A stretch of 64,000 bases of DNA from positions 163,584 through 227,583 of the IMG/VR virus record IMGVR_UViG_3300042359_000853. One strand, given 5' to 3'. Shown in pieces: positions 954 to 51,080 of the stretch (position 1 is the stretch's first letter; the number at the start of each line of letters is the position of its first letter). The notes under the pieces are model-generated. The model saw nothing but the letters and a program-made list of their open reading frames with translations. It was not told the DNA's origin and searched no databases. The position numbers and the translations under genes are program-made.

Positions 954-2078
954 ATGAGTAAAATATTTTTAGTAGGTGATATACACCTAGGTATGGGTTG
1001 GCCTAATAGTTATACTAAATGGTCAAAGGTCCATCAAGATTATTTTTCCGATTTTCTATTTCCACTTCTTGAAAGTCAGTTAAGTAGCCAAGATATTATT
1101 GTATTACTTGGTGATTTTTTTGATAATCGTGAAGTGATACCTATAGATACCTTAAATTATGGAAAAAGTGTTATAGAAAGATTATCTCGGTTAGCTCCAA
1201 CACACATCATCGTTGGAAATCACGATCTTTGGACTAGAAGTTCATCCGAGATCAATTCAGTCAATATTTTTGGATGGATACCGAATGTTTCTATTTATCA
1301 AAAAACTTCCCAAATCCAATATAGAGATAAGAAGATTTGTATGATGCCCTATATTCACCATAAAGAAGAACAAATCAAAGAAATCGAAAAATTTAGAGAT
1401 AGTAACTATTTATTTTGTCATTCAGATCTGAATGGATGTAAAATGCACTTAACATCGACAGCGCATAGAAACTCGGATAAAATTGATCTAGATGAGTTCA
1501 GGTCTTTTGAAAAAGTAAGATCAGGTCATATTCACATTCGTCAAGAGACAGGTATATTCAAGTTTGTTGGTTCTATTTTTCAAATGGATAGAGCTGATAT
1601 GGGAGACCAGAAAGGTATTTGGATTATTGATACTGATGATGATTCCGAGGTTTTCATCCCCAACACGAAATCTCCTATTTTCGAAAAGGTTTATGTTAAA
1701 ACTCCTGAAGATGTTGAAGATTTATCTAACCTAAAAGATTCTAAAAACTGGATAGATCTCTATATCTCAAACTCACTTCTTATCAACAACAGAAAACTCA
1801 GAAGAAAGTTGGAGATTCTTTTAGAAACAATTAACTTTTTATCGGTAAGTTATATTGATGATATTCAAGTTTTAGAAAAATTAGAAGGTCAAAATGAGTC
1901 AGGAGTCTTGGACGAAGAGGTCATAGCAAGAGCTATCAATCTTGAACTCGAATATACAGAAGTTATTAAAAACTATATAGAAGAACAAAAGTGGGAATCA
2001 AAAAAGATCAAATCTGGTATTCTTACTGAGTTTGACGAAATTAGTAGAATATATCAAGATGGATTTCAAAAAAATTAA
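954..2078 (+). CDS. Recombination endonuclease subunit (T4 gp47 / SbcD-Mre11 metallophosphoesterase)
   Basis: GDIHLG, LGDFFDNR, VGNHD, FCH and SGHIH phosphoesterase motifs. Confidence 0.9.
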   Translation: MSKIFLVGDIHLGMGWPNSYTKWSKVHQDYFSDFLFPLLESQLSSQDIIVLLGDFFDNREVIPIDTLNYGKSVIERLSRLAPTHIIVGNHDLWTRSSSEINSVNIFGWIPNVSIYQKTSQIQYRDKKICMMPYIHHKEEQIKEIEKFRDSNYLFCHSDLNGCKMHLTSTAHRNSDKIDLDEFRSFEKVRSGHIHIRQETGIFKFVGSIFQMDRADMGDQKGIWIIDTDDDSEVFIPNTKSPIFEKVYVKTPEDVEDLSNLKDSKNWIDLYISNSLLINNRKLRRKLEILLETINFLSVSYIDDIQVLEKLEGQNESGVLDEEVIARAINLELEYTEVIKNYIEEQKWESKKIKSGILTEFDEISRIYQDGFQKN

Positions 2079-4407: not shown

Positions 4408-5195
4408 TTTTTGGATCTTGATTTTTTCTTACCCTTTTTCCAGCGACCACCCTTTTCTTTGTATCTTTTAGCTGCTGCTCCTACAGCATAGGCTGAAGGC
4501 CAAACTTCGTATCTTGATTTGGCCCAACTCTTACAAGAAGCCCAAAGAGATGGATTGAGAGGTATGTTTTTCTCTAATAAAAAACTATATCCAACACTTT
4601 CATTATGTTGTATGTAAAGTTTCAGCTCATCTTGAATAAACCCAACCGCCTCTTCTATTCCAGAAAAGTATAACTCTTCAAATTCATCGTCTAAGTCTTC
4701 GAGATTAGTAGAGAATAGTTTATGTATTCTCACTAGACCTTCTTCACGATTTTCATCTATGTTGATAACCCACTCATAATAATAATCAAGATCGAGTTCA
4801 TCGCTAGTATATCTAACTTTCACAACAATATCATCATCTTGCATTTCCCAATCGAATTTAGATTCAAGCCCTGAAAAAAGTTCAGAAAATTCAATCATTT
4901 TTTCTTTTAGATAATTAATATCTTGAGATATATCTTCATTTATTTGATAAAATTGAGAAAATTTGTAAACAATACCCTCTTCTATCTGTGATTGAACTTG
5001 GGTATCTAAAATTTCATATTCATCTATATCGGGAAGAAGAGCTAATTTACTACCAGAATCCCAATCTACAAAAATACTTCCCATATCATCAATATAACTT
5101 ATTTTTCCCTCATCACCACTTCTAAGTTTAGTATAGGGATCTTCCAGTCGTATAATTCTTACTCTTTTTCCTATTAAATTGTCTTTTTCTTTCAT
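4404..5195 (-). CDS. Modular hypothetical protein (DUF4314-like N-terminus; basic VWPSAYA C-terminal domain)
   Basis: RVRIIRLEDPY..L..GDEG.I..IDDMGSIFVDWDSGSKLAL resembles DUF4314; C-terminus NPSLWASCK..AK.RYEVWPSAYA. Confidence 0.65.
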   Translation of the reverse strand: MKEKDNLIGKRVRIIRLEDPYTKLRSGDEGKISYIDDMGSIFVDWDSGSKLALLPDIDEYEILDTQVQSQIEEGIVYKFSQFYQINEDISQDINYLKEKMIEFSELFSGLESKFDWEMQDDDIVVKVRYTSDELDLDYYYEWVINIDENREEGLVRIHKLFSTNLEDLDDEFEELYFSGIEEAVGFIQDELKLYIQHNESVGYSFLLEKNIPLNPSLWASCKSWAKSRYEVWPSAYAVGAAAKRYKEKGGRWKKGKKKSRSKK

Positions 5196-5248
5196 ATCTG
5201 TATGTATATATATATTTTTTGAAAAATAGTAATTTTATATATAAACAA

Positions 5249-5935
5249 ATGATTACTACAAAAGATTTAGAAACAACATTCAAGGAAATATTCGAAACTG
5301 AAAAGGGGTTAGTTCAATCCATAGAAACTGTATTCGAATTATCAAGGGATAAAAGTTTTTACAAACTCGTAATTTCTATACATGGACTTTCTATCGAAGA
5401 TACACTTATTATTCATACTAAATTTATCTTCAAAACAAATTTAGAAAAAAACAAATTAATCGAAAACTCGTTTATCTATCTCTACGATATAAATTGTGAA
5501 TATCACAAAGTAGATTTTAGAAATATTATTGATCTTAGAAAAAAGATAGAAGATATTATTGAATCAAATGAGTTCGGAACAGATCTTCAAATACTCTCTG
5601 ATTTTATCGAGGCACCATCGATGTTCTTGAACTATTATCTTAAAAGAGCTAGAATAACAAACTACTCAATTTATGATGTTAAATATGATCCGAAATTTAA
5701 GACACTACCTTGTAGTCAAATAACATTTGATTTCAAGATAAATGTTAATAACGCTTATGATATTTCAGTTTCTATTCAGAAAAAAGAAAAAGAAGAGGTT
5801 GATGATATAGTGAGGTATAAATTCAGATTTCAATTTTTAGATAAAATCTTTAATAGAGAAACCGACACACTAACAAACATTCACTTTTTTATTGGATCAA
5901 ATATAGCAAAAACGCTCGATAAAATGATTAAATAA
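5249..5935 (+). CDS. Hypothetical protein
   Basis: Long ORF; start moved from 5219 to the in-frame ATG at 5249, just downstream of a TATATAAA element. Confidence 0.65.
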   Translation: MITTKDLETTFKEIFETEKGLVQSIETVFELSRDKSFYKLVISIHGLSIEDTLIIHTKFIFKTNLEKNKLIENSFIYLYDINCEYHKVDFRNIIDLRKKIEDIIESNEFGTDLQILSDFIEAPSMFLNYYLKRARITNYSIYDVKYDPKFKTLPCSQITFDFKINVNNAYDISVSIQKKEKEEVDDIVRYKFRFQFLDKIFNRETDTLTNIHFFIGSNIAKTLDKMIK

Positions 5936-5967
5936 TTTATATATACATAAAAATAAAAACTTCTACT

Positions 5968-6699
5968 ATGTTCAAACCAAATACCAATAACTATAGAACA
6001 AAATATTCTAAAATATCTCAATTTCATGATTTTACTGATAACATCTCATCTGAAAAAGATGATTTAGAAAGTGTAAAAAGAAGTTATGATCAAGATCATG
6101 ATTCAGATTATGAGCTACCTAATCTCTTCAAGTATAAATACAACCGTGTAACTCGAAAGATAGATGATAAAACGAAAGCTGAAGTTTTAGATGAGTTAGA
6201 AGAGATGCCAAATCCAAAAAAAGAAAAAGAATATACATTAGAACTTGAAAATTTAACTTCATTTGAGGATTTCGCAGATACACCGTCAAATGAAGTGAAT
6301 GAAGGACCAACTTCCTATATGTTTTTCAATAATCTTAAACTTATTCATAAACTTGTTAACGAAATGCTTACTTACGACCAAGAAGTAGTAAACTCTATTT
6401 TAGATCACGGTCACAACTGGGCCGAAGATCATATGTCAGTAGCAAAAGAAGCTATTTCTCATGTAAGAAACTATTTTGTTGGTGAAGTTGATGCTATCTC
6501 CGAATCTTACGAAGGTAACTATATGTTTTTCGGAAATCTAGTTTGTATTTCTGATATGATTGAAGAGATTATGGATAGAGATCCAAATAAAATTGACGTA
6601 GAGCTTAAAGAAAAACACGACTGGGCTGAAGATCATGTCTCAGCCGCTAAAGAAAATGTTACACAAGTTTATGATTTTCTAAAAAATGAAATTAAATAA
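5968..6699 (+). CDS. Hypothetical protein with two tandem (S/N)YMFF..NL...HxWAEDHxSxAKE domains
   Basis: Internal duplication is visible: SYMFFNNL...GHNWAEDHMSVAKE and NYMFFGNL...KHDWAEDHVSAAKE. Confidence 0.75.
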   Translation: MFKPNTNNYRTKYSKISQFHDFTDNISSEKDDLESVKRSYDQDHDSDYELPNLFKYKYNRVTRKIDDKTKAEVLDELEEMPNPKKEKEYTLELENLTSFEDFADTPSNEVNEGPTSYMFFNNLKLIHKLVNEMLTYDQEVVNSILDHGHNWAEDHMSVAKEAISHVRNYFVGEVDAISESYEGNYMFFGNLVCISDMIEEIMDRDPNKIDVELKEKHDWAEDHVSAAKENVTQVYDFLKNEIK

Positions 6700-6702
6700 G
6701 AT

Positions 6703-8124
6703 ATGATTGATAAATATTCCCAGTTTTTAGCACAAAAACTCTTATTAGAATCTGAAATCAAATATTCTGATGGTTTTAGAAAGATATTATCTGATATTGG
6801 TGACCCAGTAAGTAAAACACTATCTTCTCTGGAAAATCAAGATATTAAAACGAATGTTAATTTTATTGATATTCTCAAAGATGATAAAGAGCAATTATCG
6901 TTTATTCAAGATAAAAAAGCTTCAACTCTTTTAAGTAAACTCAAAAATGAAATAGATGTAACTTGGAATGGACAGGGTGGAATACTCAAGAACAACGCGG
7001 ATAATGAAGATGTTTTTTCAGCTCTTGGATATGTTAGACCTGAATCCGGTAATCTTCCAAGACCAGCTTCTACACAAACCAGAGGAAAATTATTGAGAGA
7101 TACGATTTCACCTAAAAGTGGTAAAATCTATGTTCTTGTAAAGTTTGGTGATATGGAAACAGTTCTCAATAAAGAGTTCTTAAATTTTGTTGATAGATCC
7201 GATGAGATCTGGACCCAATCAGTTAGACAACCCATGCGTGTAGGAAGAGCAGTGACTGCTCTATTACAAAATGCACCTGTGAAACACACTTCGGTTGAAA
7301 TTGCTGATTTTGTAAATAGATATAAAACAAAAGTTGATGAACTAAATGACGTATTTAGATTTATAGAAGTTGTAAGTGGTGATGATATAGCTAAGTGGTA
7401 TCATGTAGAAAACTATGAAGAAAAATCGGGTGGTTCAGAACTTCACCGATCATGTATGGCAAGAAAATCAGCAGGTGTCTTTGAAATCTATACCAAGAAT
7501 CCAGAAGTTTGTCAGTTAATTATTCAAAAAAGTGAGAGTGATCCCGACAAAATATCCGCTAGAGCTCTTCTGTGGACTTTGAATAGTGGAAAAAAGTTTA
7601 TGGATAGAGTTTATTTTAATGATCCTCAGTCTATTGAGTTATTTAGAAGTTATTGTAAAGAAAATAATATATGGGCTAAATATAATAATAATAGCGGAGC
7701 TTTTTCATCTGCTATTAATCCCGAAAATGGATCTAGAGAAGAGATCGAAATAGAAGTGGTTCTTGAATCGAGGAAGTACCGTCAGTTTCCCTATATGGAT
7801 ACACTGAAGTTTTTTCATCCGAAAAAAGCAATTCTAGACAACTCACATGAGGATGATCCGAACTGGTATAAATTAGAAGACACCGCTGGTGATTATATAA
7901 GTCAAGAAGATCAGGGGTGTGATAGGTGCTACGGTGAAGATTATGTTGATTGTTGGGAATGTGATGGAACGGCTTATTCTAGTTGTGATAATTGTGACGG
8001 AGACGGTAAAGTTGAAGATGAAGATGGAACAAAAGTTGAATGTGATGTATGCAATGGTAGTGGCAGAATCAATTGTGATACTTGTGATGGGGATGGAAGA
8101 CTTACTTGTCCTGAATGTGGTTAA
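6703..8124 (+). CDS. Hypothetical protein with C-terminal DnaJ-like CxxCxGxG zinc-finger repeats
   Basis: Six CxxC units in the last ~70 aa; SCM, ARALLW, FMDRVY and FPYMDT motifs upstream. Confidence 0.75.
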   Translation: MIDKYSQFLAQKLLLESEIKYSDGFRKILSDIGDPVSKTLSSLENQDIKTNVNFIDILKDDKEQLSFIQDKKASTLLSKLKNEIDVTWNGQGGILKNNADNEDVFSALGYVRPESGNLPRPASTQTRGKLLRDTISPKSGKIYVLVKFGDMETVLNKEFLNFVDRSDEIWTQSVRQPMRVGRAVTALLQNAPVKHTSVEIADFVNRYKTKVDELNDVFRFIEVVSGDDIAKWYHVENYEEKSGGSELHRSCMARKSAGVFEIYTKNPEVCQLIIQKSESDPDKISARALLWTLNSGKKFMDRVYFNDPQSIELFRSYCKENNIWAKYNNNSGAFSSAINPENGSREEIEIEVVLESRKYRQFPYMDTLKFFHPKKAILDNSHEDDPNWYKLEDTAGDYISQEDQGCDRCYGEDYVDCWECDGTAYSSCDNCDGDGKVEDEDGTKVECDVCNGSGRINCDTCDGDGRLTCPECG

Positions 8125-12422: not shown

Positions 12423-13739
12423 ATGTCAAAATTAGTAAACTTGAACACAATCAGTGATTCAGACCAAATCGATAAGATCTTGGATTCTGATCTGATGATA
12501 TTTGAAGATGTTCAAGGATCAAAAATATTAGTTCAATGGGATGGTGAAAAATTCACGATAAAACCAAAATCTTTATCTTCAGAACCTATCAACCTAGTTG
12601 ATTTAGCTATGCAGAACTATTATAACGCGGCTTTTGACTACCTTAATTCGTTAGATAAAAGAGTGAAAACATTACTCAATAAAAAGTGGTGGTATGTTTT
12701 TGAGTATTTCTCTGATAATCAACCTGCTAATATAGCTTACACAAGAACCCCAAAAAACGGATTAGTTCTAACATCCATCATTAAAGGTCGTGATTATAAC
12801 TATACTATCGAGGAGCTTGATGAATATTCCAGACTTTTCAATGTTGATCCTCTGCCGATTATTTTTCGGGGAAGACTTTCACAAAAAACAAGAGAAGCTA
12901 TTAAATATTTTCTCAACACCTCTGAGAAAGATTTAGAATATGTTTTTGGTGAAAAATCTTTTGCTTTTTTCTTTTACAAAATACTTAACCCTAACACACA
13001 AAACTCTTTTCTGATGGAAGATGAGTTTCAAAATAATCTAGAAAAACTGATTATTAAAACACCAGATACCGAAACAACATTTGCTATCTTAAATCCACTC
13101 TATAAAAAAATATCTGATAATGGATCTACTGAATTTGTTGAAGTATATACTCTTATTTTAGTTAACTTTTTGAGTTTTTGTCAATCCGTGGATCTGAAAC
13201 GTATAAAGTTGGATGCCACCAATCGTGAAGAAGCCTATATTAGCCTAATATGTAAACTATTTAATGTGTATATGACCGAGGTTAAATCTGATGTTTTAGA
13301 TTTTGAGTTTACGATACCTCATTTTTTCAATAAAGATAAGTTTAAAATAAATCGTGAGCTTATTTCTGATGTAGCTACAAAGAATATTATCTCACAAGAT
13401 CCGAAAATAGAATATATCTTCAAAGTGGTCCTGGGATCATTCAACAGAAAAAAGAAAAAACCGATTGGTGTTTTTAATAATAATACCTTAAATCTTTTCA
13501 ATAATTTTGTAGATACTTTAGAAGCTCGTGTTGATGAGTATCTTAACAAAAAATCAGAAATAGAACTCACCAAAAAGGGTCTTCTAGATTTTAGTGATTA
13601 TTTTGATATTAAATATGATACTGATTCACAAGGTCAAGTTTATCCAGATGTCTATAAAGAGTTTGAGAAGGGAGCTGATGAGAAATCTAAAAAAGATAAA
13701 TCACCAAAAGGATTCTCAATTCCAGAAAAAAAACCTTGA
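12423..13739 (+). CDS. Hypothetical protein with degenerate RNA-ligase-2-like nucleotidyltransferase motifs
   Basis: FEDVQGSKILVQWDG resembles motif I (EKxDGxN) without the Lys; YVFEYF, DPLPIIFRG and LEKLIIK resemble later motifs. The CDS is confident; the family assignment is tentative. Confidence 0.5.
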   Translation: MSKLVNLNTISDSDQIDKILDSDLMIFEDVQGSKILVQWDGEKFTIKPKSLSSEPINLVDLAMQNYYNAAFDYLNSLDKRVKTLLNKKWWYVFEYFSDNQPANIAYTRTPKNGLVLTSIIKGRDYNYTIEELDEYSRLFNVDPLPIIFRGRLSQKTREAIKYFLNTSEKDLEYVFGEKSFAFFFYKILNPNTQNSFLMEDEFQNNLEKLIIKTPDTETTFAILNPLYKKISDNGSTEFVEVYTLILVNFLSFCQSVDLKRIKLDATNREEAYISLICKLFNVYMTEVKSDVLDFEFTIPHFFNKDKFKINRELISDVATKNIISQDPKIEYIFKVVLGSFNRKKKKPIGVFNNNTLNLFNNFVDTLEARVDEYLNKKSEIELTKKGLLDFSDYFDIKYDTDSQGQVYPDVYKEFEKGADEKSKKDKSPKGFSIPEKKP

Positions 13740-13861
13740 ACTTTTAATCTATAATATCATACCTATTAGGTATTATAAATAATTATATTTTTTATAGTAA
13801 AATATAGAAAAAAAGTTGAAAAAATACTACTTTACAGATTTATATTTTAATATATAGATCT

Positions 13862-14431
13862 ATGAAATATAAAGTAAGTGAATATGCTAAATTGAAAAAC
13901 GTTACCTACCGAACCGTTTGGAACTGGATAAAATCAAATAAGATAGACTATCAAACTACAAACACCGGTGGTCTGGTTATAGTTGAAGAAGATCCCAATT
14001 CAAATAAAGAGGTAGCAGTTTATGCTCGTGTTTCTTCATCAGAGAATAAAGATAATCTAGAAAGACAGAAAAATAGATTATTGGACTATTGTGCTTCTAG
14101 AGGATATAAAGTTTCTAGTATAGTAACAGAGATTGGATCTGGATTGAACGATAAAAGACCAAAATTAGAAAAAATTCTAACAAATAGATCTATAAGTATA
14201 ATTGTAGTTGAACATCGGGATAGATTATCAAGATTTGGATTTAATTATATAGAAAAACTATTAAATTCAAATGATAGAAGGATAGAGGTAATAAATGAGC
14301 CTCTTAATGAAAAAGAAGATTTAATACAAGACTTTGTATCTATAATTACTAGTTTTACCGCTAGATTGTATGGACAAAGAAGAAGTAAAAGAAGAACCGA
14401 ATTTCTTATAAAAAATCTACAAAGTGAATGA
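13862..14431 (+). CDS. tnpA: IS607 transposase TnpA (MerR-like HTH + serine recombinase)
   Basis: N-terminal HTH, VAVYARVSS catalytic motif, EIGSGLN, VEHRDRLSRFG, EDLIQDFVSIITSF. Confidence 0.95.
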   Translation: MKYKVSEYAKLKNVTYRTVWNWIKSNKIDYQTTNTGGLVIVEEDPNSNKEVAVYARVSSSENKDNLERQKNRLLDYCASRGYKVSSIVTEIGSGLNDKRPKLEKILTNRSISIIVVEHRDRLSRFGFNYIEKLLNSNDRRIEVINEPLNEKEDLIQDFVSIITSFTARLYGQRRSKRRTEFLIKNLQSE

Positions 14432-15597
14432 TCCTAGTTGAAAAGCACATAATTAGATCAGGTAAATATTTCAATCAACTAATGGAAGTTACTAGATTGA
14501 GTAAAAATCTTTATAATTCTGGTTTGTATGCTGTGAGGCAGCACTATTTTGAATACAAGAAGTTCTTAAATTATGTAAATCTTAATAATATGTTTGTTGA
14601 ACAGAAACAACAAGATTATTACAAACTACCAGCAAAGGTTAGCCAACAAACACTGAAAATGGTGGAACAAAATTTCAAATCATTTTTTGGATTACTAAAA
14701 TCTGAAAAAACTAAAAAGGTAAAAATACCTAAATATCTGGATAAAAATTCCAGTTTTTTAACAATTTGGACAAATCAAGCAGTTTCTCTCAAAAAGAAGG
14801 GTTACTTAAAGCTATCAGGAACTGATGTCTATATCAAAACAGATATTGATCATATCAATCAAGTTAGAGTTGTTCCTAGAAATAATGAGTTAGTAGTAGA
14901 GATATTATATGAAGTCCGGGAAAATGATTTAAAGAAAGATAACGGAAAATATTCATCTATAGATCTTGGCATCAATAATCTCATGACTTTATCGGGAAAC
15001 ACAACAAAACCTATTATAGTCAATGGGAAACCACTAAAATCTATTAATCAGTATTACAACAAGAAAAAATCCGAAATTCAGGGTAAATTAGAAACAATCA
15101 ACAAAACAAAAAAGAGCAAAAAATTAAATAAACTAACAAACAAAAGAAACAACAAAATAAATGATTATCTACACAAATCAAGTAAAATAATTATCAATCA
15201 TTTAGTTTCCAAAGATATATGTACTTTAATAGTTGGATACAATCAATACTGGAAACAAGAGATAAATATTGGAAAAAAGAATAATCAGAATTTTGTTTCA
15301 ATTCCCTATCTAAAATTATTAAATATGTTAGAATACAAATGTAAAAAAGAAGGCATTAACTTTGTCAAAAACGAGGAGAGTTATACATCCAAGTGCTCGT
15401 TTATAGATGGTGAGGAAATTAAAAAACATACAAAATATTTAGGTAAAAGAATAAAAAGAGGATTATTCGAGAGCGCGTCTGGTAAATTGATAAATGCGGA
15501 TTTGAATGGATCTCTAAATATTCTCAAAAAAGTAGTTGGGGAATTTCAGTACCCAATAGAGGTGTGTAGCACGCCAAAAGTTATTAATTTAGCTTAG
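14428..15597 (+). CDS. tnpB: TnpB RNA-guided endonuclease (rearranged RuvC-II type)
   Basis: RuvC-I SIDLGINNL; IVGYN at the canonical RuvC-II site; downstream EESYTSK; RuvC-III INADLNGSLNI. Confidence 0.92.
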   Translation: MILVEKHIIRSGKYFNQLMEVTRLSKNLYNSGLYAVRQHYFEYKKFLNYVNLNNMFVEQKQQDYYKLPAKVSQQTLKMVEQNFKSFFGLLKSEKTKKVKIPKYLDKNSSFLTIWTNQAVSLKKKGYLKLSGTDVYIKTDIDHINQVRVVPRNNELVVEILYEVRENDLKKDNGKYSSIDLGINNLMTLSGNTTKPIIVNGKPLKSINQYYNKKKSEIQGKLETINKTKKSKKLNKLTNKRNNKINDYLHKSSKIIINHLVSKDICTLIVGYNQYWKQEINIGKKNNQNFVSIPYLKLLNMLEYKCKKEGINFVKNEESYTSKCSFIDGEEIKKHTKYLGKRIKRGLFESASGKLINADLNGSLNILKKVVGEFQYPIEVCSTPKVINLA

Positions 15598-15633
15598 AAA
15601 CTTTTTCTATGGATTTCCATAAAATTAGTAGCT

Positions 15634-16791
15634 ATGAACAAGGATTATTTACTTCACCATTATCCAACCTATTTAGATAGATATTTTTCTGGGAAAACTA
15701 TAAAATTTCGAGATCAAATTTTGAAGCGTGATTATTTTGTTCATCTGATCTCTTCGCTACTTACTAAATATTATTACACTAAAGAGAACGAGTTCAAGTT
15801 GAATGCTACTATCTTAAGAGAAACTTATGGTAAGTGGTATAACTATTATATGGAATATTTAGTTCATAACGGTATTCTTATTGTTTATAAAAATCATCAA
15901 AGGGGTAGGCGGTCAAGAATCTACCAGCTCTCTATCTCTATCTTAACGAGTCCTGTAAGTAGATATCTGAATGGTGATGAGATTTTGTTGAAAAAAAGAA
16001 AAAAATGGACAGATTATAATCTCAAATCAAGTGAATCACCTATTTGTATGGAGATAAGACAAAGGTTGATAGAAGATTTATATAGCGTTCAAATACAATA
16101 TGATAAGGCTTGTTTTGAACTCTTATCAAAAGAACACCTCTCTCGAGTTGAACTTGAAAGAAATAACTTCGCGGTGGAATGTATTCGTGAAGGCGAAATC
16201 TATTTTCACTTTGATGATTATGGAAGATTTCACACACCTTTCACTATACTTCCCAAAAACGTTAGAAATAACTGCCTTACTATTCAAAATAGTGATATCA
16301 CAGAGATTGATATACCAAACTCACAGCCACTATTCCTTCTAAAACTCATTCAGATGAATAGGCACATTCCGATAGAAGAGGTAGAGTATGAACTATTCTC
16401 AGAATTAGTTAGAGATGGAGTTTTCTATAAACATCTTTCTAAAATCTCTGGAAATAAAAATGTTAAAGAAGTGAAAAAAAATGTTTTTGAGATCTTTTTC
16501 GGACATAATAATCAAAACTCTACATCTAGATTATTTTCTGGTTTTTTTCCAAGTATCTTTAATTTTCTAAGGGTCATTAAAAGGGAACGTGGTGATTACC
16601 GATGGGTTTCCCATCAACTACAAAGATTAGAATCAGATTTTATTTTCAATAAAGTTATTAAAAAAATCTATAGTAGAGATCCCAATATCAAACTATTCAC
16701 GGTTCATGATAGTATTTTTTGTAGAAAAGATAGGGTTGGGTTTGTAGATAACATCTTTATTTCAGAAATAAAAAAAGAGTTTGATTTCTAA
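15634..16791 (+). CDS. Compact PolA/T7-RNA-polymerase-superfamily palm protein
   Basis: FHFDDYGRFH, EIDIPNSQP (motif A Asp), KKNVFEIFFG (Kx7FG, motif B), TVHDSI (motif C). Confidence 0.6.
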   Translation: MNKDYLLHHYPTYLDRYFSGKTIKFRDQILKRDYFVHLISSLLTKYYYTKENEFKLNATILRETYGKWYNYYMEYLVHNGILIVYKNHQRGRRSRIYQLSISILTSPVSRYLNGDEILLKKRKKWTDYNLKSSESPICMEIRQRLIEDLYSVQIQYDKACFELLSKEHLSRVELERNNFAVECIREGEIYFHFDDYGRFHTPFTILPKNVRNNCLTIQNSDITEIDIPNSQPLFLLKLIQMNRHIPIEEVEYELFSELVRDGVFYKHLSKISGNKNVKEVKKNVFEIFFGHNNQNSTSRLFSGFFPSIFNFLRVIKRERGDYRWVSHQLQRLESDFIFNKVIKKIYSRDPNIKLFTVHDSIFCRKDRVGFVDNIFISEIKKEFDF

Positions 16792-16815: not shown

Positions 16816-17355
16816 ATGTTTGATTCTCTACATCAGTCAAGTTTTATTATCTTTTTCGATTATGATCACGCTCAAAAATCTATTATAGAATCCATTCTTT
16901 ATTCAAGAAATTGGTTTATTCGTAATATATCTAAAGTGGACGATACACTTACAAGTGAAGCTCTTTTTTGCTACACACTTGATGATGTAAACTTGAAATC
17001 TGAAGCTCTGTATCTTTTACAAAAAACAGGCCTTCGTCACTGCGTTGTTTCTATTGAAAACTCTCTATTCATACTGACTCGTTCGAATGAATCTATAAAA
17101 ATTTCTAGAGTAGTAGATGAGAACGATATCGAGCCGGTGATATTATACTTTATCATTCAAAATATGCCCTATAGATTTGTAAGAGAAAAAACTTATAATC
17201 TGGTTTCTATGAAAGAAGATTTAGAAAATGGAACCCAAGTTCAAGTTTTAGACGGTAAGGTGTGGATTGACATGGTTGTAGAAGATTTAGATAGTGAATG
17301 GAAAAACCTCTACGGAATCCTATCTAAATACGGCAGGGTTCGTATTCAAAGATAA
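16816..17355 (+). CDS. Hypothetical protein
   Basis: ORF preceded by AATATATA. Confidence 0.65.
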   Translation: MFDSLHQSSFIIFFDYDHAQKSIIESILYSRNWFIRNISKVDDTLTSEALFCYTLDDVNLKSEALYLLQKTGLRHCVVSIENSLFILTRSNESIKISRVVDENDIEPVILYFIIQNMPYRFVREKTYNLVSMKEDLENGTQVQVLDGKVWIDMVVEDLDSEWKNLYGILSKYGRVRIQR

Positions 17356-19524: not shown

Positions 19525-19896
19525 ATGATCATCACAAAAGAAATACGGGTAAAAATTACCGAGCAAAATATAAATCACTTTGAGAATCTCGGATATGAAA
19601 CAGCACTGGGAGAAGAAATATCCATACCGGTTGAACTACTTACTTCGGGAAGTCATCATAGAATTCGTTGTAAGTGTGATAGTTGTGGTATAGAAAAAGA
19701 TGTTATTTACAAGAACTATATCAAATACGATAATAACTGGGGAGAATATAAGTGTAGAAAGTGCTCTGAGTCAAAAAGAAAAGAATCACTAAAGAAATCT
19801 TTAGGTGTTGAATATCCAATACAAAACATTGAGATAAAAAAAAGAATATTATCTCGTTCAAGTGGCACGAAAGTCACTTCTAAACAACTAGATTAA
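19525..19896 (+). CDS. Zinc-ribbon protein (CxCDxC...CxxC) related to homing-endonuclease N-termini
   Basis: CKCDSCG and CRKC motifs; one KKSLGVEYPIQN repeat like those in the Hef-like ORFs. Confidence 0.6.
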   Translation: MIITKEIRVKITEQNINHFENLGYETALGEEISIPVELLTSGSHHRIRCKCDSCGIEKDVIYKNYIKYDNNWGEYKCRKCSESKRKESLKKSLGVEYPIQNIEIKKRILSRSSGTKVTSKQLD

Positions 19897-21599
19897 AACT
19901 CAAACTCTGTTCCGGGCTCTGGTGGAGTCTCAGTTCCACCTTGTGCTGGTGGTCCTTGTGCTGGTGGTCCTTGTGCTGGTGGCTCCTCTGTACCTGGTTC
20001 TGCTGGTGGCGTCTCTGCACCGGGTTCAGTAGCTCCACCCTCGGGAACACCACCCATATCCGGTGTTGCTTCTGATGAACCTTCTACTTTTTTATTTAAC
20101 CAATATCTTTCATTTTCATTTCTTTCTTCTTGAGAAAGACCATAGATATGTTCCATAAGATAATCAATATGGAAATAAGTTCTATCGTCTTTCATAAGAG
20201 AAAGAAGATTAGTAACAATAGATACTTTTTTATCCATATTTGACAGCTTTCTCCAATTCTCAAAAATTTGATTTACATTAAAAACAATATCACACTCATT
20301 TAAGAAAACTTCATCATCTTTGAGCTCGGGAAACTCCATACACATCTGAAGTCTTATGGGCTTAACGATGAGTTCTTTATAGATTGCACGAAGACGACCG
20401 ATAAAATTTCCAAATACAACTTCATCACGAGTCATCGAAGATATTTCTTCATAAATAGTTCCACCACCAGAGGTTTCATCAAATCTCTGAAAAGGAATTT
20501 TAGAAGCTGATTGAAGAGCTTTCTTAAAGTATCCAAGAATAACATCCTCGTTTAAGTTGTGACCTTGGGGTTGTTTAATTTCCATGGTAGGAGTTCCAGC
20601 ATCACTATCAGGAAACCAATATTGTTTGTTGTAGGGTAGATGTTTCGATCCACTAATCTGAAGAGTTCCTAGTGTATCATCCCATTCAACTTCTTCAGAG
20701 TAGTCAGAAATAAGTTGACCGATTTGCTCCTCTGCTCTTTGACGAGGAAGACCTTTCACAGGAATCGTAAATTGTTGATAAAGTGTAGCATTGATAACAT
20801 TGAACATTATTCTTGCTTGTTCAATAACTTTCAACTGGTTGTAAGGCTTGATAAGACCCTCAAGATAAGAAATCTCTGTGTAGTCGTTTTGTGTTGAATA
20901 AGAGATGAAGATTATCTGTGAATCAAGAAAAATTCTTCTTAGTTGTGGATCTTCGGGAAATTGAATCCAAAGATTTCCAATATTTGGTTCATAAGCTGGA
21001 ACTAATGTTTCCGGCTTTAATCTGTTGAAATGAACAACGTTTTGTTTTTTATCATCCCAAACAATTTCCATGGCTATGTAACCATCTATCAAAAAATCTT
21101 TCATTAGATTGAAAGCTGTTATGCCATCATTAAATCCGTATTTGTTATATATTTTCTCGAAAAACTCTTGATATTTATCTCTAATTTCTTGTGAATACGA
21201 GGCGGATATGTTTTTTGGTGTACAAAAATCTTTCTCACTATAAATAATTGCCTCTTCGGCTACTCTTGAAACATAATCTCTCAGGTAATCTTTGATCGAA
21301 TATTCACGAAGTATTCTTCTTTTATCAATATAAGCTCTATCAAGATAAGGTATTGATTTTTTGTTTAATACACTAGCAACTGCTCTTTGTGAGAAAAAAT
21401 CATAATACGATCCATCTTTTTGAGAATATGGATCCTCATTCATATTTACACCCACGGTGTTTCTTAAGATCATATCGTCGTATTTCATACCCCATGAACT
21501 CAAATTTCTTAAAAGTCGTGAGAAAAGACCACGATTTTCGACTGATGAACTCATTATCAGTCCAGAGCCTTCTCTATTTTGAGGATTGTATGATGCCAT
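19893..21599 (-). CDS. Portal protein (T4 gp20-like)
   Basis: FLIDGYIAME, SYLEGLIKPYNQLKVIEQARI, YFKKALQSASKIPFQRF, RDEVVFGNFIGRLR; Pro/Gly/acidic tail. Confidence 0.9.
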   Translation of the reverse strand: MASYNPQNREGSGLIMSSSVENRGLFSRLLRNLSSWGMKYDDMILRNTVGVNMNEDPYSQKDGSYYDFFSQRAVASVLNKKSIPYLDRAYIDKRRILREYSIKDYLRDYVSRVAEEAIIYSEKDFCTPKNISASYSQEIRDKYQEFFEKIYNKYGFNDGITAFNLMKDFLIDGYIAMEIVWDDKKQNVVHFNRLKPETLVPAYEPNIGNLWIQFPEDPQLRRIFLDSQIIFISYSTQNDYTEISYLEGLIKPYNQLKVIEQARIMFNVINATLYQQFTIPVKGLPRQRAEEQIGQLISDYSEEVEWDDTLGTLQISGSKHLPYNKQYWFPDSDAGTPTMEIKQPQGHNLNEDVILGYFKKALQSASKIPFQRFDETSGGGTIYEEISSMTRDEVVFGNFIGRLRAIYKELIVKPIRLQMCMEFPELKDDEVFLNECDIVFNVNQIFENWRKLSNMDKKVSIVTNLLSLMKDDRTYFHIDYLMEHIYGLSQEERNENERYWLNKKVEGSSEATPDMGGVPEGGATEPGAETPPAEPGTEEPPAQGPPAQGPPAQGGTETPPEPGTEFEF

Positions 21600-48935: not shown

Positions 48936-51080
48936 ATGGCAGTAGCAAAAAAAGAAGAAGTTGTTAAGCAGATAGTATTCACAACCAAAATGGTTGAGAA
49001 TGTTACCAAAAATATAAACGACGGTGTAGTCGTAAAAAGATTTCAAAACCCTTGGTTTCAAAACGAAATCGGTGTAAGAAGAAGTGGAGTTGTATTCAAT
49101 AGAACAGAAGAAGAACTTCAAGAATACATTAAATGTAAACTTGATATTAAATATTTTGCACAAAAATATTGTAAAATAAAAACAGAAGATGGAACGATAA
49201 CACATATCGAGCTTCGTGATTACCAAAAAGAAATCTTAGATCTATTCTCAAAAAATAGATTTTCTATACTTTGTTCGAGTAGACAAATAGGAAAAACCGT
49301 AAACACCGCGATCACGATATTACATTTTCTACTTTTCAACAACGATAAAAACGCGATGATCGTAGCAAACGTAGCTGCTACAACAATTGAAATCGTAGAT
49401 AAGATTAAGGCTATTTATGTTCTTCTACCTTTCTTTCTGAAGGCTGGTATAAAAAACTGGAATCAACGAAGTATTGTATTTGATAATGGTTGTAGAATAA
49501 AAACTGCGGCTAGGTCTAAAACACCAGCTATTGGTTTTACGATTGACCTACTTTATATGGACGAATTTGCGCATATTCCCTCGAATATCATCGAACCCTA
49601 CTACACGGCTGCCTATCCAACGGTATCTGCTATACAGAACTCAAAAATTATTATTACTTCAACCCCGAACGGTATGAACCTGTTCTATAAACTTTTAACA
49701 GCTGCTGAAAGACCTGAGGGAGATCCACTCAAGAACAACTACAAAGCTATGAGAGTTTATTGGTATCAAGTTCCTGGTAGGTTCGTGACTTACTACCGAT
49801 TGAATCCATTTAAAATGAGAGATTTTGATCTTACCAAAGAAATGGTCTTCAATATAGCTCGTGAAGAGTTTGAAGATTCTACAAAAGTTCTACTTAAATA
49901 CAATCCAGATTTCGAGAAAGATGTTGTTCATGTTTATAACAACGATATTATTACGGAGGATGTATCTAAAGGATTTAGATTCTTAACACCATCGGGTAAA
50001 GAAATACACATTTCACAGATAGCTGAAGTTTCAACTTGGAAAGAAGAAGCTATCAAAGATATTGGTGGAGAAGATGCATTTAATCAAGAGTTTGGATTGA
50101 GATTTATTAACTCTTCAAGATCCCTACTTTCAGAGAGTGTAATAGAGGGTCTTATAAAGGCTAAGAAAAACTATCAGTGGCAAGAGATTGATAAGATGGA
50201 GACTTTGCTTAATTTTTCCTATCAAGATCTTAAATGGATCGATGATCCTGATATTTTTTCTCAAGAAAGAAGAAAGTTAGTTAAAGGTGTAATATCAATC
50301 GATATATCTGAAGGTTTAGGTCAAGATTATTCTGTTATGAATATATTTAAGATCTCACCGAAATCACTAGACACGGTAGAAGCTTTCAGCGTTGATTATA
50401 AAAATTTATCTGATTTCTTTTGTCTAGAACAAATAGGTTTATTTAGAAGTAATGTTATTTCAGTAAAGCAACTAGCTGAACTTTTCTATGTTTTAGCTTT
50501 TGAGTTTTTTGATCCCGATAACTTTAAGGTTGTTCTAGAAATTAATACCTACGGAAATGAGTTTTTAGCTCATCTACCACATGTGTTTGATGGTAACAAC
50601 AATTACGGTAGTAATATTTTCTTTAGATATAAGCATAAATCCGACGCTATAGAAGAAAAAGTCGGTCTTAAACTAGGTGAAAACAAAAATCTTTTAGTGA
50701 AAGATTATCAAGATAACATGAATAAGAAAAATATTATCATCAATAACGAAGATAATATTAGAGAAATAACTACTTTTGTTAAGCACACAACAGCTCACGG
50801 CAACACTCGTTACGCCGCAGATATTGGAAATGATGATATAGTTATGACCGTAGTAAACTCATCGTCGGTTTTCCAAAAACATCCGTTCAGAGAAATTGTT
50901 GAAGATGCTGCTCCTGTCATAGCTGGAACCGAGTTATACAAACATTTTCAGGCAATATTAGGAAATCAAGTTGATGAAAACTCAATCAACTACTCGTCGA
51001 TTATTAGAGAGCAGAAGTTCAGAAAGGATAGACTAAAGAAGATGTCAAGTTACGAAAAAAGTCCTTGGGCTAGAGATTAA
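48936..51080 (+). CDS. terL: Terminase large subunit (T4 gp17-like)
   Basis: YFAQKYCKI, LRDYQ, SRQIGKT (Walker A), LLYMDEFAH (Walker B), STPNGMN.FY, IDISEGLGQDYS, NDDIVM. Confidence 0.95.
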   Translation: MAVAKKEEVVKQIVFTTKMVENVTKNINDGVVVKRFQNPWFQNEIGVRRSGVVFNRTEEELQEYIKCKLDIKYFAQKYCKIKTEDGTITHIELRDYQKEILDLFSKNRFSILCSSRQIGKTVNTAITILHFLLFNNDKNAMIVANVAATTIEIVDKIKAIYVLLPFFLKAGIKNWNQRSIVFDNGCRIKTAARSKTPAIGFTIDLLYMDEFAHIPSNIIEPYYTAAYPTVSAIQNSKIIITSTPNGMNLFYKLLTAAERPEGDPLKNNYKAMRVYWYQVPGRFVTYYRLNPFKMRDFDLTKEMVFNIAREEFEDSTKVLLKYNPDFEKDVVHVYNNDIITEDVSKGFRFLTPSGKEIHISQIAEVSTWKEEAIKDIGGEDAFNQEFGLRFINSSRSLLSESVIEGLIKAKKNYQWQEIDKMETLLNFSYQDLKWIDDPDIFSQERRKLVKGVISIDISEGLGQDYSVMNIFKISPKSLDTVEAFSVDYKNLSDFFCLEQIGLFRSNVISVKQLAELFYVLAFEFFDPDNFKVVLEINTYGNEFLAHLPHVFDGNNNYGSNIFFRYKHKSDAIEEKVGLKLGENKNLLVKDYQDNMNKKNIIINNEDNIREITTFVKHTTAHGNTRYAADIGNDDIVMTVVNSSSVFQKHPFREIVEDAAPVIAGTELYKHFQAILGNQVDENSINYSSIIREQKFRKDRLKKMSSYEKSPWARD

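What the first reader, a model, noticed from the sequence alone, without database searches (positions are those of the whole stretch)
15634..16791. 385-aa minimal T7-type polymerase-like protein in a phage that also has a gp55-like sigma
Motifs appear in T7-RNAP order: FHFDDYGRFH (cf. YNMDWRGRVY), DIPNSQP (motif A Asp), K-x7-FG (cf. K631-x7-Y639G) and VHDSI (cf. IHDSF; PolA has HDE). There is an N-terminal wHTH-like part. It is less than half the size of T7 RNAP and has no exonuclease domain. It could be a compact RNA polymerase, a primase-like enzyme or a replication-origin protein. T4-like phages are not known to need a single-subunit RNAP.
Basis: partly seen in the sequence, partly recalled or inferred. 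Interest (0 to 1): 0.65.

Follow-up and report, generated by a model that had tools for sequence, protein, structure and literature searches.

The report
Compact family-A polymerase with winged-helix head
A 385-residue gene of a huge phage is predicted with high confidence to fold as a stripped-down family-A nucleic-acid polymerase with all catalytic residues and a DNA-binding winged-helix domain in front; it belongs to a very large, uncharacterised family that best fits the previously proposed "TV-Pol" mini-polymerases, so it is a new member of a known kind, not a new kind of enzyme.

Summary
The ORF (15634-16791, +, 385 aa) and all four motifs are real and in the stated order. An AlphaFold2 model (pLDDT 90.8) has an N-terminal winged helix (about residues 11-112) and a 265-residue thumb/palm/fingers core. 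[quoted passage not shown] DNA polymerases score higher (Pol theta Z 14.0, T7 DNAP 13.5, Klenow 13.1) than T7 RNAP (10.6) or N4 RNAPII (8.4). R198, D226, K281, Q330, E333, H358 and D359 are invariant across distant relatives, and dN/dS is 0.10-0.18. No Pfam, PHROG, NCBIfam or PADLOC model hits it, yet a profile finds 5,672 cluster representatives in phages and bacterial mobile elements. The host record is a 228-kb fragment of a huge phage that replicates with PolB. The adjacent IS607-like TnpA/TnpB element is a recent insertion at the gene's start codon, not a partner. The downstream 179-aa protein has a SAM-lyase-like fold, not an SSB fold. Best reading: a TV-Pol-type, low-processivity DNA primase-polymerase aimed by its winged helix. 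The substrate (dNTP or NTP) and the biological role are unproven. The "T7-type RNAP" label is only partly supported. Interest is moderate.

The parts
15634..16791 (+). Complete ORF of 385 aa: winged-helix head plus minimal family-A polymerase core
   Evidence: ORF list. AF2 pLDDT 90.8, pTM 0.85. 389 word-search homologs. dN/dS 0.10-0.18.
15664..15969 (+). N-terminal winged helix-turn-helix domain (residues about 11-112)
   Evidence: VIA-align matches to ORC/Cdc6 WH (7jgr_B Z 4.9, 5ujm_A 4.7), RepA-like initiator 4pta_D (Z 4.7), TubR 4asn_A (Z 4.6) and MCM8 WH (Z 4.5). Z values are modest, so this is a fold-level assignment only.
15979..16191 (+). Short helical thumb-like segment (residues about 116-186)
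   Evidence: DSSP helices 116-131, 139-149, 156-164 and 171-186. Structural alignments to PolA start at residues 121-137.
16204..16233 (+). T/DxxGR motif, FHFDDYGRFH (residues 191-200), with invariant R198
   Evidence: It corresponds to the beta-hairpin arginine that PMC2579912 lists as a defining feature.
16303..16338 (+). Motif A, EIDIPNSQPLFL (residues 224-235), with catalytic D226
   Evidence: D226 is invariant; S230, Q231 and P232 are at least 90% conserved in the divergent set. The strand at 220-225 followed by the helix at 230-241 matches the PolA motif A layout.
16465..16503 (+). Motif B / O-helix (residues 278-290): K278, K281, F285, F289, G290
   Evidence: K281 is invariant. Relatives carry R-x3-K here. 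The sub-threshold PDB sequence hits N4 RNAPII and phiLo PolA align this motif in register.
16618..16650 (+). LQRLESDFIFN helix (residues 329-339) with invariant Q330 and E333
   Evidence: The same LQ(R)xE signature aligns with the Ma-LMM01 MAP_030 family (hhalign E 0.006; 0 of 60 shuffles reach it).
16699..16716 (+). Motif C, TVHDSI (residues 356-361), with catalytic D359
   Evidence: T356, H358 and D359 are invariant. They sit at the beta-hairpin turn between strands 354-357 and 360-364.

Best explanation
The gene encodes an active, minimal nucleic-acid polymerase of the family-A (PolA / T7-RNAP) superfamily. A winged-helix DNA-binding domain of about 115 residues is fused to a 265-residue thumb/palm/fingers core, with no exonuclease and only a stub of a thumb. 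It is best filed with the TV-Pol type of transposon- and virus-borne mini-polymerases. The most likely mode of action, which is inferred, runs as follows. The winged helix places the enzyme on a particular DNA site or structure. The palm (D226, D359 plus a metal ion) and the O-helix (K281, F285, F289) then make short, low-processivity, DNA-templated products. These are probably DNA, and probably include de novo priming as shown for CcPol-MP. The phage's own PolB replisome then extends them, or they fill gaps. Shown here: the ORF, motif conservation, purifying selection, the fold, the family's size and distribution, and independence from the neighbouring IS element. Inferred: catalytic activity, the substrate (dNTP over NTP), priming, and the role in phage replication.
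For: Fold: the AF2 model has pLDDT 90.8. Foldseek's significant PDB hits (E <= 0.001) and nearly all its top 50 are family-A DNA polymerases. VIA-align gives apPol Z 13.1, Klenow 12.8, T7 DNAP 12.5 and Pol theta 12.2. The second look gives Pol theta Z 14.0 at rmsd 2.8 A over 237 of about 255 core residues, and all top 50 rows are family-A DNAPs.

Active site: R198, D226, K281, Q330, E333, H358 and D359 are invariant in a 23-47%-identity set. dN/dS is 0.10-0.18.

Family: 5,672 representatives at E <= 1e-3. Relatives occur in huge phages and in bacterial islands beside a tyrosine integrase, Fic and DNA methylases. These are the lineages and settings described for TV-Pols (PMC2579912).

Link to a likely TV-Pol: hhalign against the Ma-LMM01 MAP_030 family gives E 0.019 for the N-terminal half and E 0.006 for the LQRxE helix. 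Each exceeds all 60 block-shuffled controls, and the two matches are collinear. BFVD also lists the Zamilon virophage replication protein, at E 8.7e-3 over 284 columns.

Prior annotation: a 37%-identical marine-phage protein is named 'Putative DNA polymerase I', and ESM Atlas cluster neighbours are named 'family A palm domain'.

Precedent for priming: CcPol, the only TV-Pol tested, is a DNA polymerase that primes de novo with its partner MP (PMC7581432, PMC10061031). The complete huge-phage relatives carry PolB and no Pfam PolA or T7-type RNAP, so this enzyme is accessory.
Against: No biochemical data exist for any close relative. No Pfam, PHROG, NCBIfam, PADLOC or PDB sequence match was found. 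The sequence link to TV-Pol is weak (hhalign probability 2.5-6%), and MAP_030 is only my inferred candidate for the Ma-LMM01 TV-Pol. No helicase, SSB or other replication gene is conserved next to the gene. The downstream 179-aa protein has a SAM-lyase-like fold, not an OB fold, so there is no CcPol-MP-like pairing. No iterons or repeats lie nearby. Motif C is HDS as in T7 RNAP, not HDE. The steric-gate residue could not be assigned without model coordinates; it is Q231 by the D+5 rule or L233 by helix register, so the choice between dNTP and NTP is open.
Confidence: 0.5

Rival explanations
1. It is a minimal DNA-dependent RNA polymerase, in the way N4 RNAPII is a minimal T7-like enzyme. The winged helix replaces the T7 N-terminal promoter-binding domain. 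The enzyme transcribes a small set of phage genes or makes an RNA primer or R-loop at an origin.
For: Motif C is HDS, as in T7 RNAP. The best sequence hit in the PDB, though sub-threshold, is N4 RNAPII (E 0.69), with motifs B and C in register, including TVHD. T7 RNAP and the mitochondrial RNAP reach Z 10.6 and N4 RNAPII Z 8.4 on its large chain alone. One ESM Atlas neighbour cluster is auto-named 'DNA-directed RNA polymerase family protein'. A DNA-binding head is what a promoter-specific enzyme would need.
Against: DNA polymerases outrank RNA polymerases in every structural search. Pfam RNA_pol is not matched. The specificity loop, intercalating hairpin and AT-rich recognition loop cannot fit, because only about 65 residues lie between motifs B and C. 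The Tyr that senses the 2'-OH in T7 RNAP is Phe here, and the position equivalent to H784 is variable (residue roles are from my knowledge). The phage has sigma-like genes, which suggests it uses the host RNAP.
Confidence: 0.22
2. It is a repair or gap-filling polymerase that works with the RNA-ligase-like protein encoded 33 nt upstream, forming a fill-and-seal module analogous to bacterial LigD.
For: In uninterrupted relatives the 438-aa gene, the polymerase gene and the 179-aa gene are packed 33 and 24 nt apart. The 438-aa protein's nearest language-model clusters carry RNA_ligase / T4 Rnl2 domains. The order is kept in LR745206, LR756502 and several metagenomic relatives.
Against: The adjacency is confined to one clade with overall synteny. 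In LR756501, LR756504, LR756511 and the bacterial relatives no homolog of the 438-aa protein lies within about 5-8 kb. The ligase-like assignment rests on features only, with no Pfam or PDB sequence hit. A winged-helix head is not expected for a general repair enzyme.
Confidence: 0.1
3. It is the leftover replicase of a selfish TV-Pol-type element that settled in an ancestor of these phages. It serves the element rather than the phage.
For: TV-Pols were described as genes of mobile elements, often next to resolvases or IS605-type transposases. The gene evolves faster than its neighbours: 39-47% identity against 64-75% for the upstream gene. The spacer in front of it has taken up different mobile genes: IS607 here and a DUF723 gene in L002 and L004.
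Against: It has been inherited in the same syntenic slot across phages whose portals are only 69% identical. There is one copy per genome. It is under purifying selection. No recombinase is conserved next to it, and the IS607 is a separate, recent arrival.
Confidence: 0.12
4. It is a catalytically dead polymerase fold used only as a DNA-binding regulator.
For: None specific; no activity has been shown.
Against: Both metal-binding aspartates, the O-helix lysine and the template-contacting arginine are invariant across very distant relatives.
Confidence: 0.03

Closest known systems
TV-Pol family (Iyer, Abhiman and Aravind 2008, PMC2579912)
   Same: Both are stand-alone minimal family-A cores of 400-600 aa with a short thumb, a beta-hairpin Arg, two palm Asp and an R/K-x3-K fingers helix. 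Neither has a nuclease. A subset of TV-Pols has an extra N-terminal domain. Both occur in phages (Ma-LMM01) and in mobile islands of Bacteroidota, Planctomycetes and Proteobacteria, sometimes beside resolvases or IS605-type transposases. There is a weak but above-null, collinear profile match to the Ma-LMM01 candidate.
   Different: At 385 aa it is slightly below the published size range. Here it is a vertically inherited, single-copy gene of huge phages, with no D5 helicase or recombinase partner. The N-terminal domain is a winged helix, whereas TV-PolN was predicted to be all-helical. Sequence-level membership could not be proven with the sequences at hand.
CcPol-MP primase-polymerase of SCCmec (PMC7581432, PMC10061031)
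   Same: Both are truncated family-A polymerases on a mobile genome. CcPol-MP is the only biochemical precedent that such an enzyme can prime DNA synthesis de novo.
   Different: CcPol needs the OB-fold partner MP and sits next to a helicase. Here the downstream small protein has a SAM-lyase-like fold and no helicase is nearby. In this protein, DNA binding is presumably supplied in cis by the winged helix.
Family-A DNA polymerases (Klenow, Taq, T7 gp5, Pol theta, apicoplast Pol)
   Same: These are the best structural matches (Z 12-14, rmsd about 3 A over about 240 residues). Motifs A (D..SQ), B (K-x3-F/Y-x3-F-G) and C (HD) appear in the same order.
   Different: There is no Pfam DNA_pol_A match and about 10-13% identity. 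The pol domain is about 265 residues against about 410. There is no 3'-5' exonuclease. Motif C is HDS, not HDE. The thumb is very short.
Phage N4 RNAPII (gp15/gp16; PDB 6dt7) and T7 RNAP
   Same: They belong to the same superfamily. Motif C is TVHD(S/C). N4 RNAPII is the precedent for a pared-down enzyme that depends on an added DNA-binding function.
   Different: Their structural scores are lower (8.4 and 10.6). There are no promoter-recognition elements. Phe replaces the ribose-sensing Tyr. The core is far smaller than even N4 RNAPII.

Membership tests
TV-Pol (PMC2579912) | Minimal family-A catalytic core without any nuclease domain | tested here: met
   385 aa. The core, residues about 121-385, aligns to PolA thumb base, palm and fingers. 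No other domain is present except the N-terminal winged helix.
TV-Pol (PMC2579912) | Beta-hairpin with an absolutely conserved arginine before the palm | tested here: met
   R198 in D-x-x-G-R is invariant.
TV-Pol (PMC2579912) | Two conserved metal-binding aspartates in the RRM-like palm | tested here: met
   D226 and D359 are invariant, at the strand end and the hairpin turn of the model.
TV-Pol (PMC2579912) | Fingers helix with an RxxxK motif | tested here: met
   K281 is invariant. Position -4 is R in bacterial relatives and K (or V277/K278) in the phage clade.
TV-Pol (PMC2579912) | Significant sequence-profile match to recognised TV-Pol members | tested here: inconclusive
   Against the Ma-LMM01 MAP_030 family (my inferred TV-Pol candidate), hhalign gives E 0.019 and 0.006 at probability 2.5-6%. 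Both exceed all 60 block shuffles. An HMMER scan of the Ma-LMM01 genome found nothing. The published alignment was not available.
TV-Pol (PMC2579912) | Residence in transposons or viruses, often with a D5 helicase, resolvase, integrase or IS605-type transposase | tested here: met
   Relatives occur in huge phages and in bacterial islands with an integrase, Fic and methylases. No D5 helicase was seen. The resolvase/TnpB pair beside this copy is an independent insertion.
T7-like single-subunit RNA polymerase | Match to Pfam RNA_pol (PF00940) | tested here: not met
   No hit for the protein or for the genomes. The genome control search was uninformative.
T7-like single-subunit RNA polymerase | Promoter-recognition elements: N-terminal domain with AT-rich loop and intercalating hairpin, plus a specificity loop between motifs B and C | tested here: not met
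   The N-terminal part is a 100-residue winged helix. Only about 65 residues separate motif B from motif C. The list of T7 features is from established knowledge.
T7-like single-subunit RNA polymerase | Ribose-discriminating Tyr in motif B (T7 Y639) and His before the Q/D motif (T7 H784) | tested here: not met
   F289 is invariant in the phage clade, and F or Y occurs in distant relatives. Position 328 is variable. The equivalence is by motif spacing, not by superposition.
T7-like single-subunit RNA polymerase | Motif C H-D-S | tested here: met
   H358 and D359 are invariant; S360 is at least 90% conserved.
Family-A DNA polymerase (Pfam DNA_pol_A) | Sequence match to PF00476 | tested here: not met
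   No hit even at E <= 1, and none among 49 divergent members.
Family-A DNA polymerase (Pfam DNA_pol_A) | Right-hand thumb/palm/fingers fold with motifs A, B and C | tested here: met
   Z 12-14, with all top rows family-A DNAPs.
Family-A DNA polymerase (Pfam DNA_pol_A) | Steric-gate Glu in motif A and H-D-E in motif C | tested here: not met
   Motif A reads D-I-P-N-S-Q-P-L, with no Glu. Motif C is H-D-S.
PolA-SSB primase (CcPol-MP type, PMC10061031) | Adjacent small OB-fold partner protein | tested here: not met
   The conserved downstream 179-aa protein folds like phage SAM lyases (7ock Z 9.1; 6zm9) and not like an OB fold.

The most novel reading that the evidence does not exclude
The winged-helix/mini-PolA fusion is a self-sufficient, site-specific primase-polymerase. 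It would be a one-chain enzyme that recognises a phage origin through its winged helix and starts DNA (or RNA) chains de novo with a polymerase core of only about 265 residues. That would make it the smallest templated family-A enzyme known, and a third, widespread class of primase used by huge phages beside their T4-type replisome.
Probability: 0.2. Interest if true: 0.7.

Novelty: new member of a known kind. Interest (0 to 1): 0.4.

Why it matters
The family is very large: 5,672 cluster representatives at 50% identity. Its members have no Pfam model and no experimental data, and most appear in databases as 'hypothetical'. If they are active, they define how small a templated family-A polymerase can be, about 265 residues. 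They would also test the 2008 prediction that TV-Pols are primase-polymerases, and could yield very compact enzymes for biotechnology. For huge-phage biology, the question is why a genome with a full PolB replisome keeps a second, DNA-targeted mini-polymerase under purifying selection.

Tried and rejected
- Family libraries gave nothing for the protein: Pfam, PHROGs, NCBIfam and PADLOC. PDB sequence searches with the single sequence and with two profiles gave only sub-threshold hits.
- hhalign of the shallow alignment A1 against single sequences (T7 RNAP, Ma-LMM01 MAP_030) found nothing. An HMMER scan of the Ma-LMM01 genome with A2 found nothing.
- The idea that the gene is cargo or a partner of the IS607-like TnpA/TnpB pair is rejected. 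Relatives 97% identical have only a 33-nt spacer there, and the element's junction lies at the start codon.
- The idea that the 179-aa neighbour is an MP-like SSB partner is rejected: its fold is SAM-lyase-like. For that reason I did not spend the complex-prediction job, and I claim no binding.
- A conserved replication neighbourhood was not found in distant huge phages or in bacteria. Iterons or repeats near the gene: none convincing. Rfam found nothing relevant.
- The search for related loci with the divergent alignment failed for lack of conserved stretches; it was rerun with A1.
- Three distant metagenomic members lay on contigs too short to show context.
- The supplement of PMC2579912 with the TV-Pol alignment is not held.
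- The steric-gate residue could not be assigned, because the tools return no residue-level superposition.
Full report

Yes. Window 15634..16791 (+) is an intact ORF of 385 aa.
- FHFDDYGRFH at residues 191-200;
- DIPNSQP at residues 226-232;
- K281-x7-F289-G290;
- VHDSI at residues 357-361.

A word-index search found 389 homologs of about 400-420 aa. All are 'hypothetical' and none has a precomputed Pfam domain. In an alignment of 49 of them the motif residues are invariant. In a second alignment drawn from a profile search, where all but one row are 23-47% identical to the window protein, R198, H200, T204, D226, Y265, K281, Q330, E333, T356, H358 and D359 remain invariant. Codon comparisons with three relatives give dN/dS of 0.10-0.18. 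This is a functional gene under purifying selection, and the motifs are not chance.

**2. What is it?**

Sequence libraries are silent:
- Pfam, PHROGs and NCBIfam give no hit, and neither does PADLOC.
- The PDB sequence search with the protein itself finds nothing.
- A PDB search with a divergent profile gives only two sub-threshold hits: N4 RNAPII (E 0.69) and the phiLo family-A DNA polymerase (E 1.2). Both align motif B, and N4 RNAPII also aligns motif C, in the expected register.

Structure prediction decides the matter. The AF2 model built on the 49-sequence alignment has mean pLDDT 90.8 and pTM 0.85.
- Foldseek against the PDB returns family-A DNA polymerases in nearly all of its top 50 rows (Plasmodium apicoplast Pol, Aquifex and M. 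smegmatis Pol I, Taq, Klenow, Bst, Pol theta, T7 gp5). Human mitochondrial RNAP appears at rank 44.
- An independent all-against-representatives search gives apPol Z 13.1, Klenow 12.8, Aquifex Pol I 12.7, T7 DNAP 12.5, Pol theta 12.2, Pol nu 12.2, DpoZ 10.8, T7 RNAP 10.6, yeast mtRNAP 10.6 and N4 RNAPII 8.4. B-family polymerases follow at Z of about 5.
- A second look at Foldseek's best 1,000 chains raises the top to Pol theta at Z 14.0, rmsd 2.8 A, over 237 residues. Every one of the 50 rows shown is a family-A DNA polymerase.
- These alignments cover residues about 121-385, which is essentially the whole C-terminal 265 residues.
- Residues about 11-112 separately match winged-helix domains: ORC/Cdc6 WH, the RepA-like initiator 4pta, TubR and MCM8 WH, at Z 4.5-4.9. 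That is a fold-level match only.

The anatomy is therefore: winged helix; four short thumb-like helices; the T/DxxGR hairpin (R198); motif A strand and helix (D226); a small helical fingers module containing the O-helix (K281, F285, F289); the LQRxES helix (Q330, E333); and the motif C hairpin (H358, D359).

**3. Genomic setting**

The window is the last 64 kb of a 227,583-bp IMG/VR virus record that CheckV rates as 39% complete. Its T4-type portal is 69% identical to those of the 642-kb and 635-kb uncultured phages LR756502 and LR745206, and 47-49% identical to those of three further huge-phage records of 636-735 kb. tblastn finds one copy of the polymerase-like gene in each of six such huge-phage records, at 28-42% identity.

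Four of these complete relatives carry PolB genes and have no Pfam DNA_pol_A match. Pfam RNA_pol also gave no match, but that search's control was uninformative. The enzyme is therefore accessory to a PolB replisome. The own record has a strong Sigma70_r2 ORF outside the window.

**4. The neighbours are not partners**

*Upstream IS element.* Immediately upstream lie a serine recombinase (13862-14431; Pfam Resolvase, phrog_6620 'transposase') and a TnpB (14428-15597; OrfB_IS605 plus the Cas12f-like TNB domain). Together they form an IS607-type element.
- In three metagenomic contigs whose polymerase gene is 97% identical, the upstream 438-aa gene is followed after 33 nt by the polymerase gene. 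No IS is present.
- DNA alignment puts the left junction after ...TATTAGGTAT (about window 13773) and the right junction directly at the ATG at 15634.
- Imperfect terminal inverted repeats lie at 13790-13812 and 15602-15624.
- The element is thus a recent insertion of about 1.86 kb at the start codon. Other relatives carry different insertions in this spacer: small ORFs, or a DUF723 gene.

*Synteny.* The order 438 aa, polymerase, 179 aa, glycosyltransferase, 363 aa is kept in LR745206 and LR756502 and, at least in part, in the metagenomic relatives examined. It is not kept in the three more distant huge phages, nor in short-contig or bacterial relatives.

*Downstream 179-aa protein.* I folded it (pLDDT 83.5). 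Its best matches in both aligners are T3 SAM lyase (7ock; Z 9.1 over 121 residues) and phage SAM lyase Svi3-3. It is not an OB-fold SSB, so the CcPol-MP-type 'PolA-SSB' arrangement does not apply.

*Upstream 438-aa protein.* It resembles RNA-ligase clusters by language-model features only.

*Repeats.* No iterons or other repeats mark the locus.

**5. Size and reach of the family**

A profile search of 1.84 billion representatives finds 5,672 proteins at E <= 1e-3, 3,677 at E <= 1e-10 and 360 at E <= 1e-30. In species genomes, relatives of 472-514 aa occur in a deltaproteobacterial MAG, a Planctomycetia MAG, Moheibacter stercoris and a Weeksellaceae MAG. The three neighbourhoods I scanned hold a tyrosine integrase, a Fic protein and DNA methyltransferases, that is, mobile islands. 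These relatives keep D-x-x-G-R, (E)IDIKNSQP, R-x3-K, LQRxES and HDS.

Database names already point to the fold:
- BFVD holds a 403-aa, 37%-identical 'Putative DNA polymerase I [uncultured marine phage]' with TM 0.92. It also lists the Zamilon virophage replication protein at E 8.7e-3.
- ESM Atlas neighbours are auto-named 'family A palm domain-containing protein'.

**6. Comparison with what is known**

Iyer, Abhiman and Aravind (2008; PMC2579912) described the TV-Pol family. These are minimal family-A-like polymerases of 400-600 residues in transposons and viruses.
- They are found in Bacteroidetes, Planctomycetes and Proteobacteria, in phage Ma-LMM01 and in Sputnik.
- They have a short thumb, an Arg-bearing hairpin, two palm Asp and an RxxxK fingers helix.
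- Some have an extra N-terminal domain.
- They are often next to resolvases, integrases or IS605-type transposases.
- They were predicted to be primase-polymerases.

All structural features listed there are met here. For a sequence test I took the Ma-LMM01 ORF that sits beside two transposase genes (MAP_030) as the likely TV-Pol, and built a six-row alignment of it (five homologs). Profile-profile comparison with the present family gives E 0.019 for the N-terminal domain and thumb region. With the N-terminal halves removed it gives E 0.006 for the LQRxE helix. The two matches are collinear, and each exceeds all 60 block-shuffled controls. HH-suite probabilities are only 2.5-6%, however. I therefore call membership likely but not proven.

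The only TV-Pol tested biochemically, CcPol of SCCmec, is a DNA polymerase that primes de novo when bound to the OB-fold protein MP (PMC7581432, PMC10061031).

**7. DNA or RNA product?**

This is unresolved.

For DNA:
- DNA polymerases consistently outrank RNA polymerases structurally.
- The motif-B position of T7 RNAP Y639 is Phe.
- No conserved His sits at the H784-equivalent position.
- A bulky residue (Q231 by the D+5 spacing shared by Klenow E710 and T7 G542, or L233 by helix register) lies where T7 RNAP has Gly.

For RNA:
- Motif C is HDS.
- N4 RNAPII gives the best, though non-significant, sequence hit.

The residue roles come from my knowledge of the Klenow and T7 literature. The equivalences rest on motif spacing, not on superposition.

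**8. Verdict**

Most likely it is a low-processivity, DNA-targeted primase-polymerase that is accessory to the PolB replisome of a huge phage (confidence about 0.5). Rivals are a minimal RNA polymerase (0.22), a selfish-element relic (0.12), a repair polymerase paired with the ligase-like neighbour (0.1) and a dead fold (0.03). It is a new member of a known kind. Interest is moderate, because the family is very large, compact and wholly uncharacterised.

Noticed in passing
window about 13773-15633 (TnpA 13862-14431, TnpB 14428-15597): An IS607-type element (serine recombinase plus TnpB) is inserted exactly at the start codon of the polymerase-like gene. It has imperfect terminal inverted repeats at 13790-13812 and 15602-15624. 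It is absent from relatives 97% identical, which have a 33-nt spacer instead. In Ma-LMM01 a TnpB-like gene also lies just upstream of, and co-oriented with, the likely TV-Pol gene. This echoes the association reported in 2008, which may reflect target preference rather than function.
   Followed up: partly
window 16816-17355 (+), 179 aa: The conserved downstream protein folds (pLDDT 83.5) like phage SAM lyases: T3 SAMase 7ock at Z 9.1 over 121 residues, and Svi3-3 6zm9. It has an extra small beta-rich C-terminal part. It is a candidate anti-restriction or anti-BREX protein. It evolves very fast (23-33% identity in relatives).
   Followed up: partly
window 12423-13739 (+), 438 aa: The upstream protein has no Pfam, PHROG or PDB sequence hit. 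Its nearest language-model clusters carry RNA_ligase / T4 Rnl2 domains. By eye, its motif-I-like stretch lacks a lysine at the canonical position. It is well conserved (64-75%) among huge-phage relatives.
   Followed up: partly
L018 (LR756511) 4911-6074 and 6071-7357: In this 595-kb phage the family member overlaps by 4 nt the start of a 428-aa protein that does match Pfam DNA_pol_A (E 1.2e-19). This is a tandem of two exonuclease-less family-A-type polymerases. A NUDIX gene and a MoxR-like AAA gene follow.
   Followed up: partly
A strong Sigma70_r2 ORF (59.9 bits, 217 aa) lies outside the window in the same record.
   Followed up: partly
L022 (JALOAD010000086.1, 'Candidatus Muiribacterium halophilum' MAG): This 8.8-kb contig, binned as bacterial, carries the polymerase-like gene (39% identity) and the glycosyltransferase (47%) of the phage synteny block. 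It is probably a phage contig mis-binned into the MAG.
   Followed up: no
window 19893-21599 (-), C-terminus of the T4-type portal: The portal ends in a proline-rich tandem repeat, encoded by 15-nt direct repeats at 19939-19983, that the huge-phage portals do not align to (the matches stop near residue 499).
   Followed up: no
window 954-2078 (+) and 48936-51080 (+): An SbcD-like nuclease subunit (phrog_100, E 3e-54) and a large terminase (phrog_5989, E 5e-46) lie in the window. Both are typical of jumbo-phage core genes.
   Followed up: no
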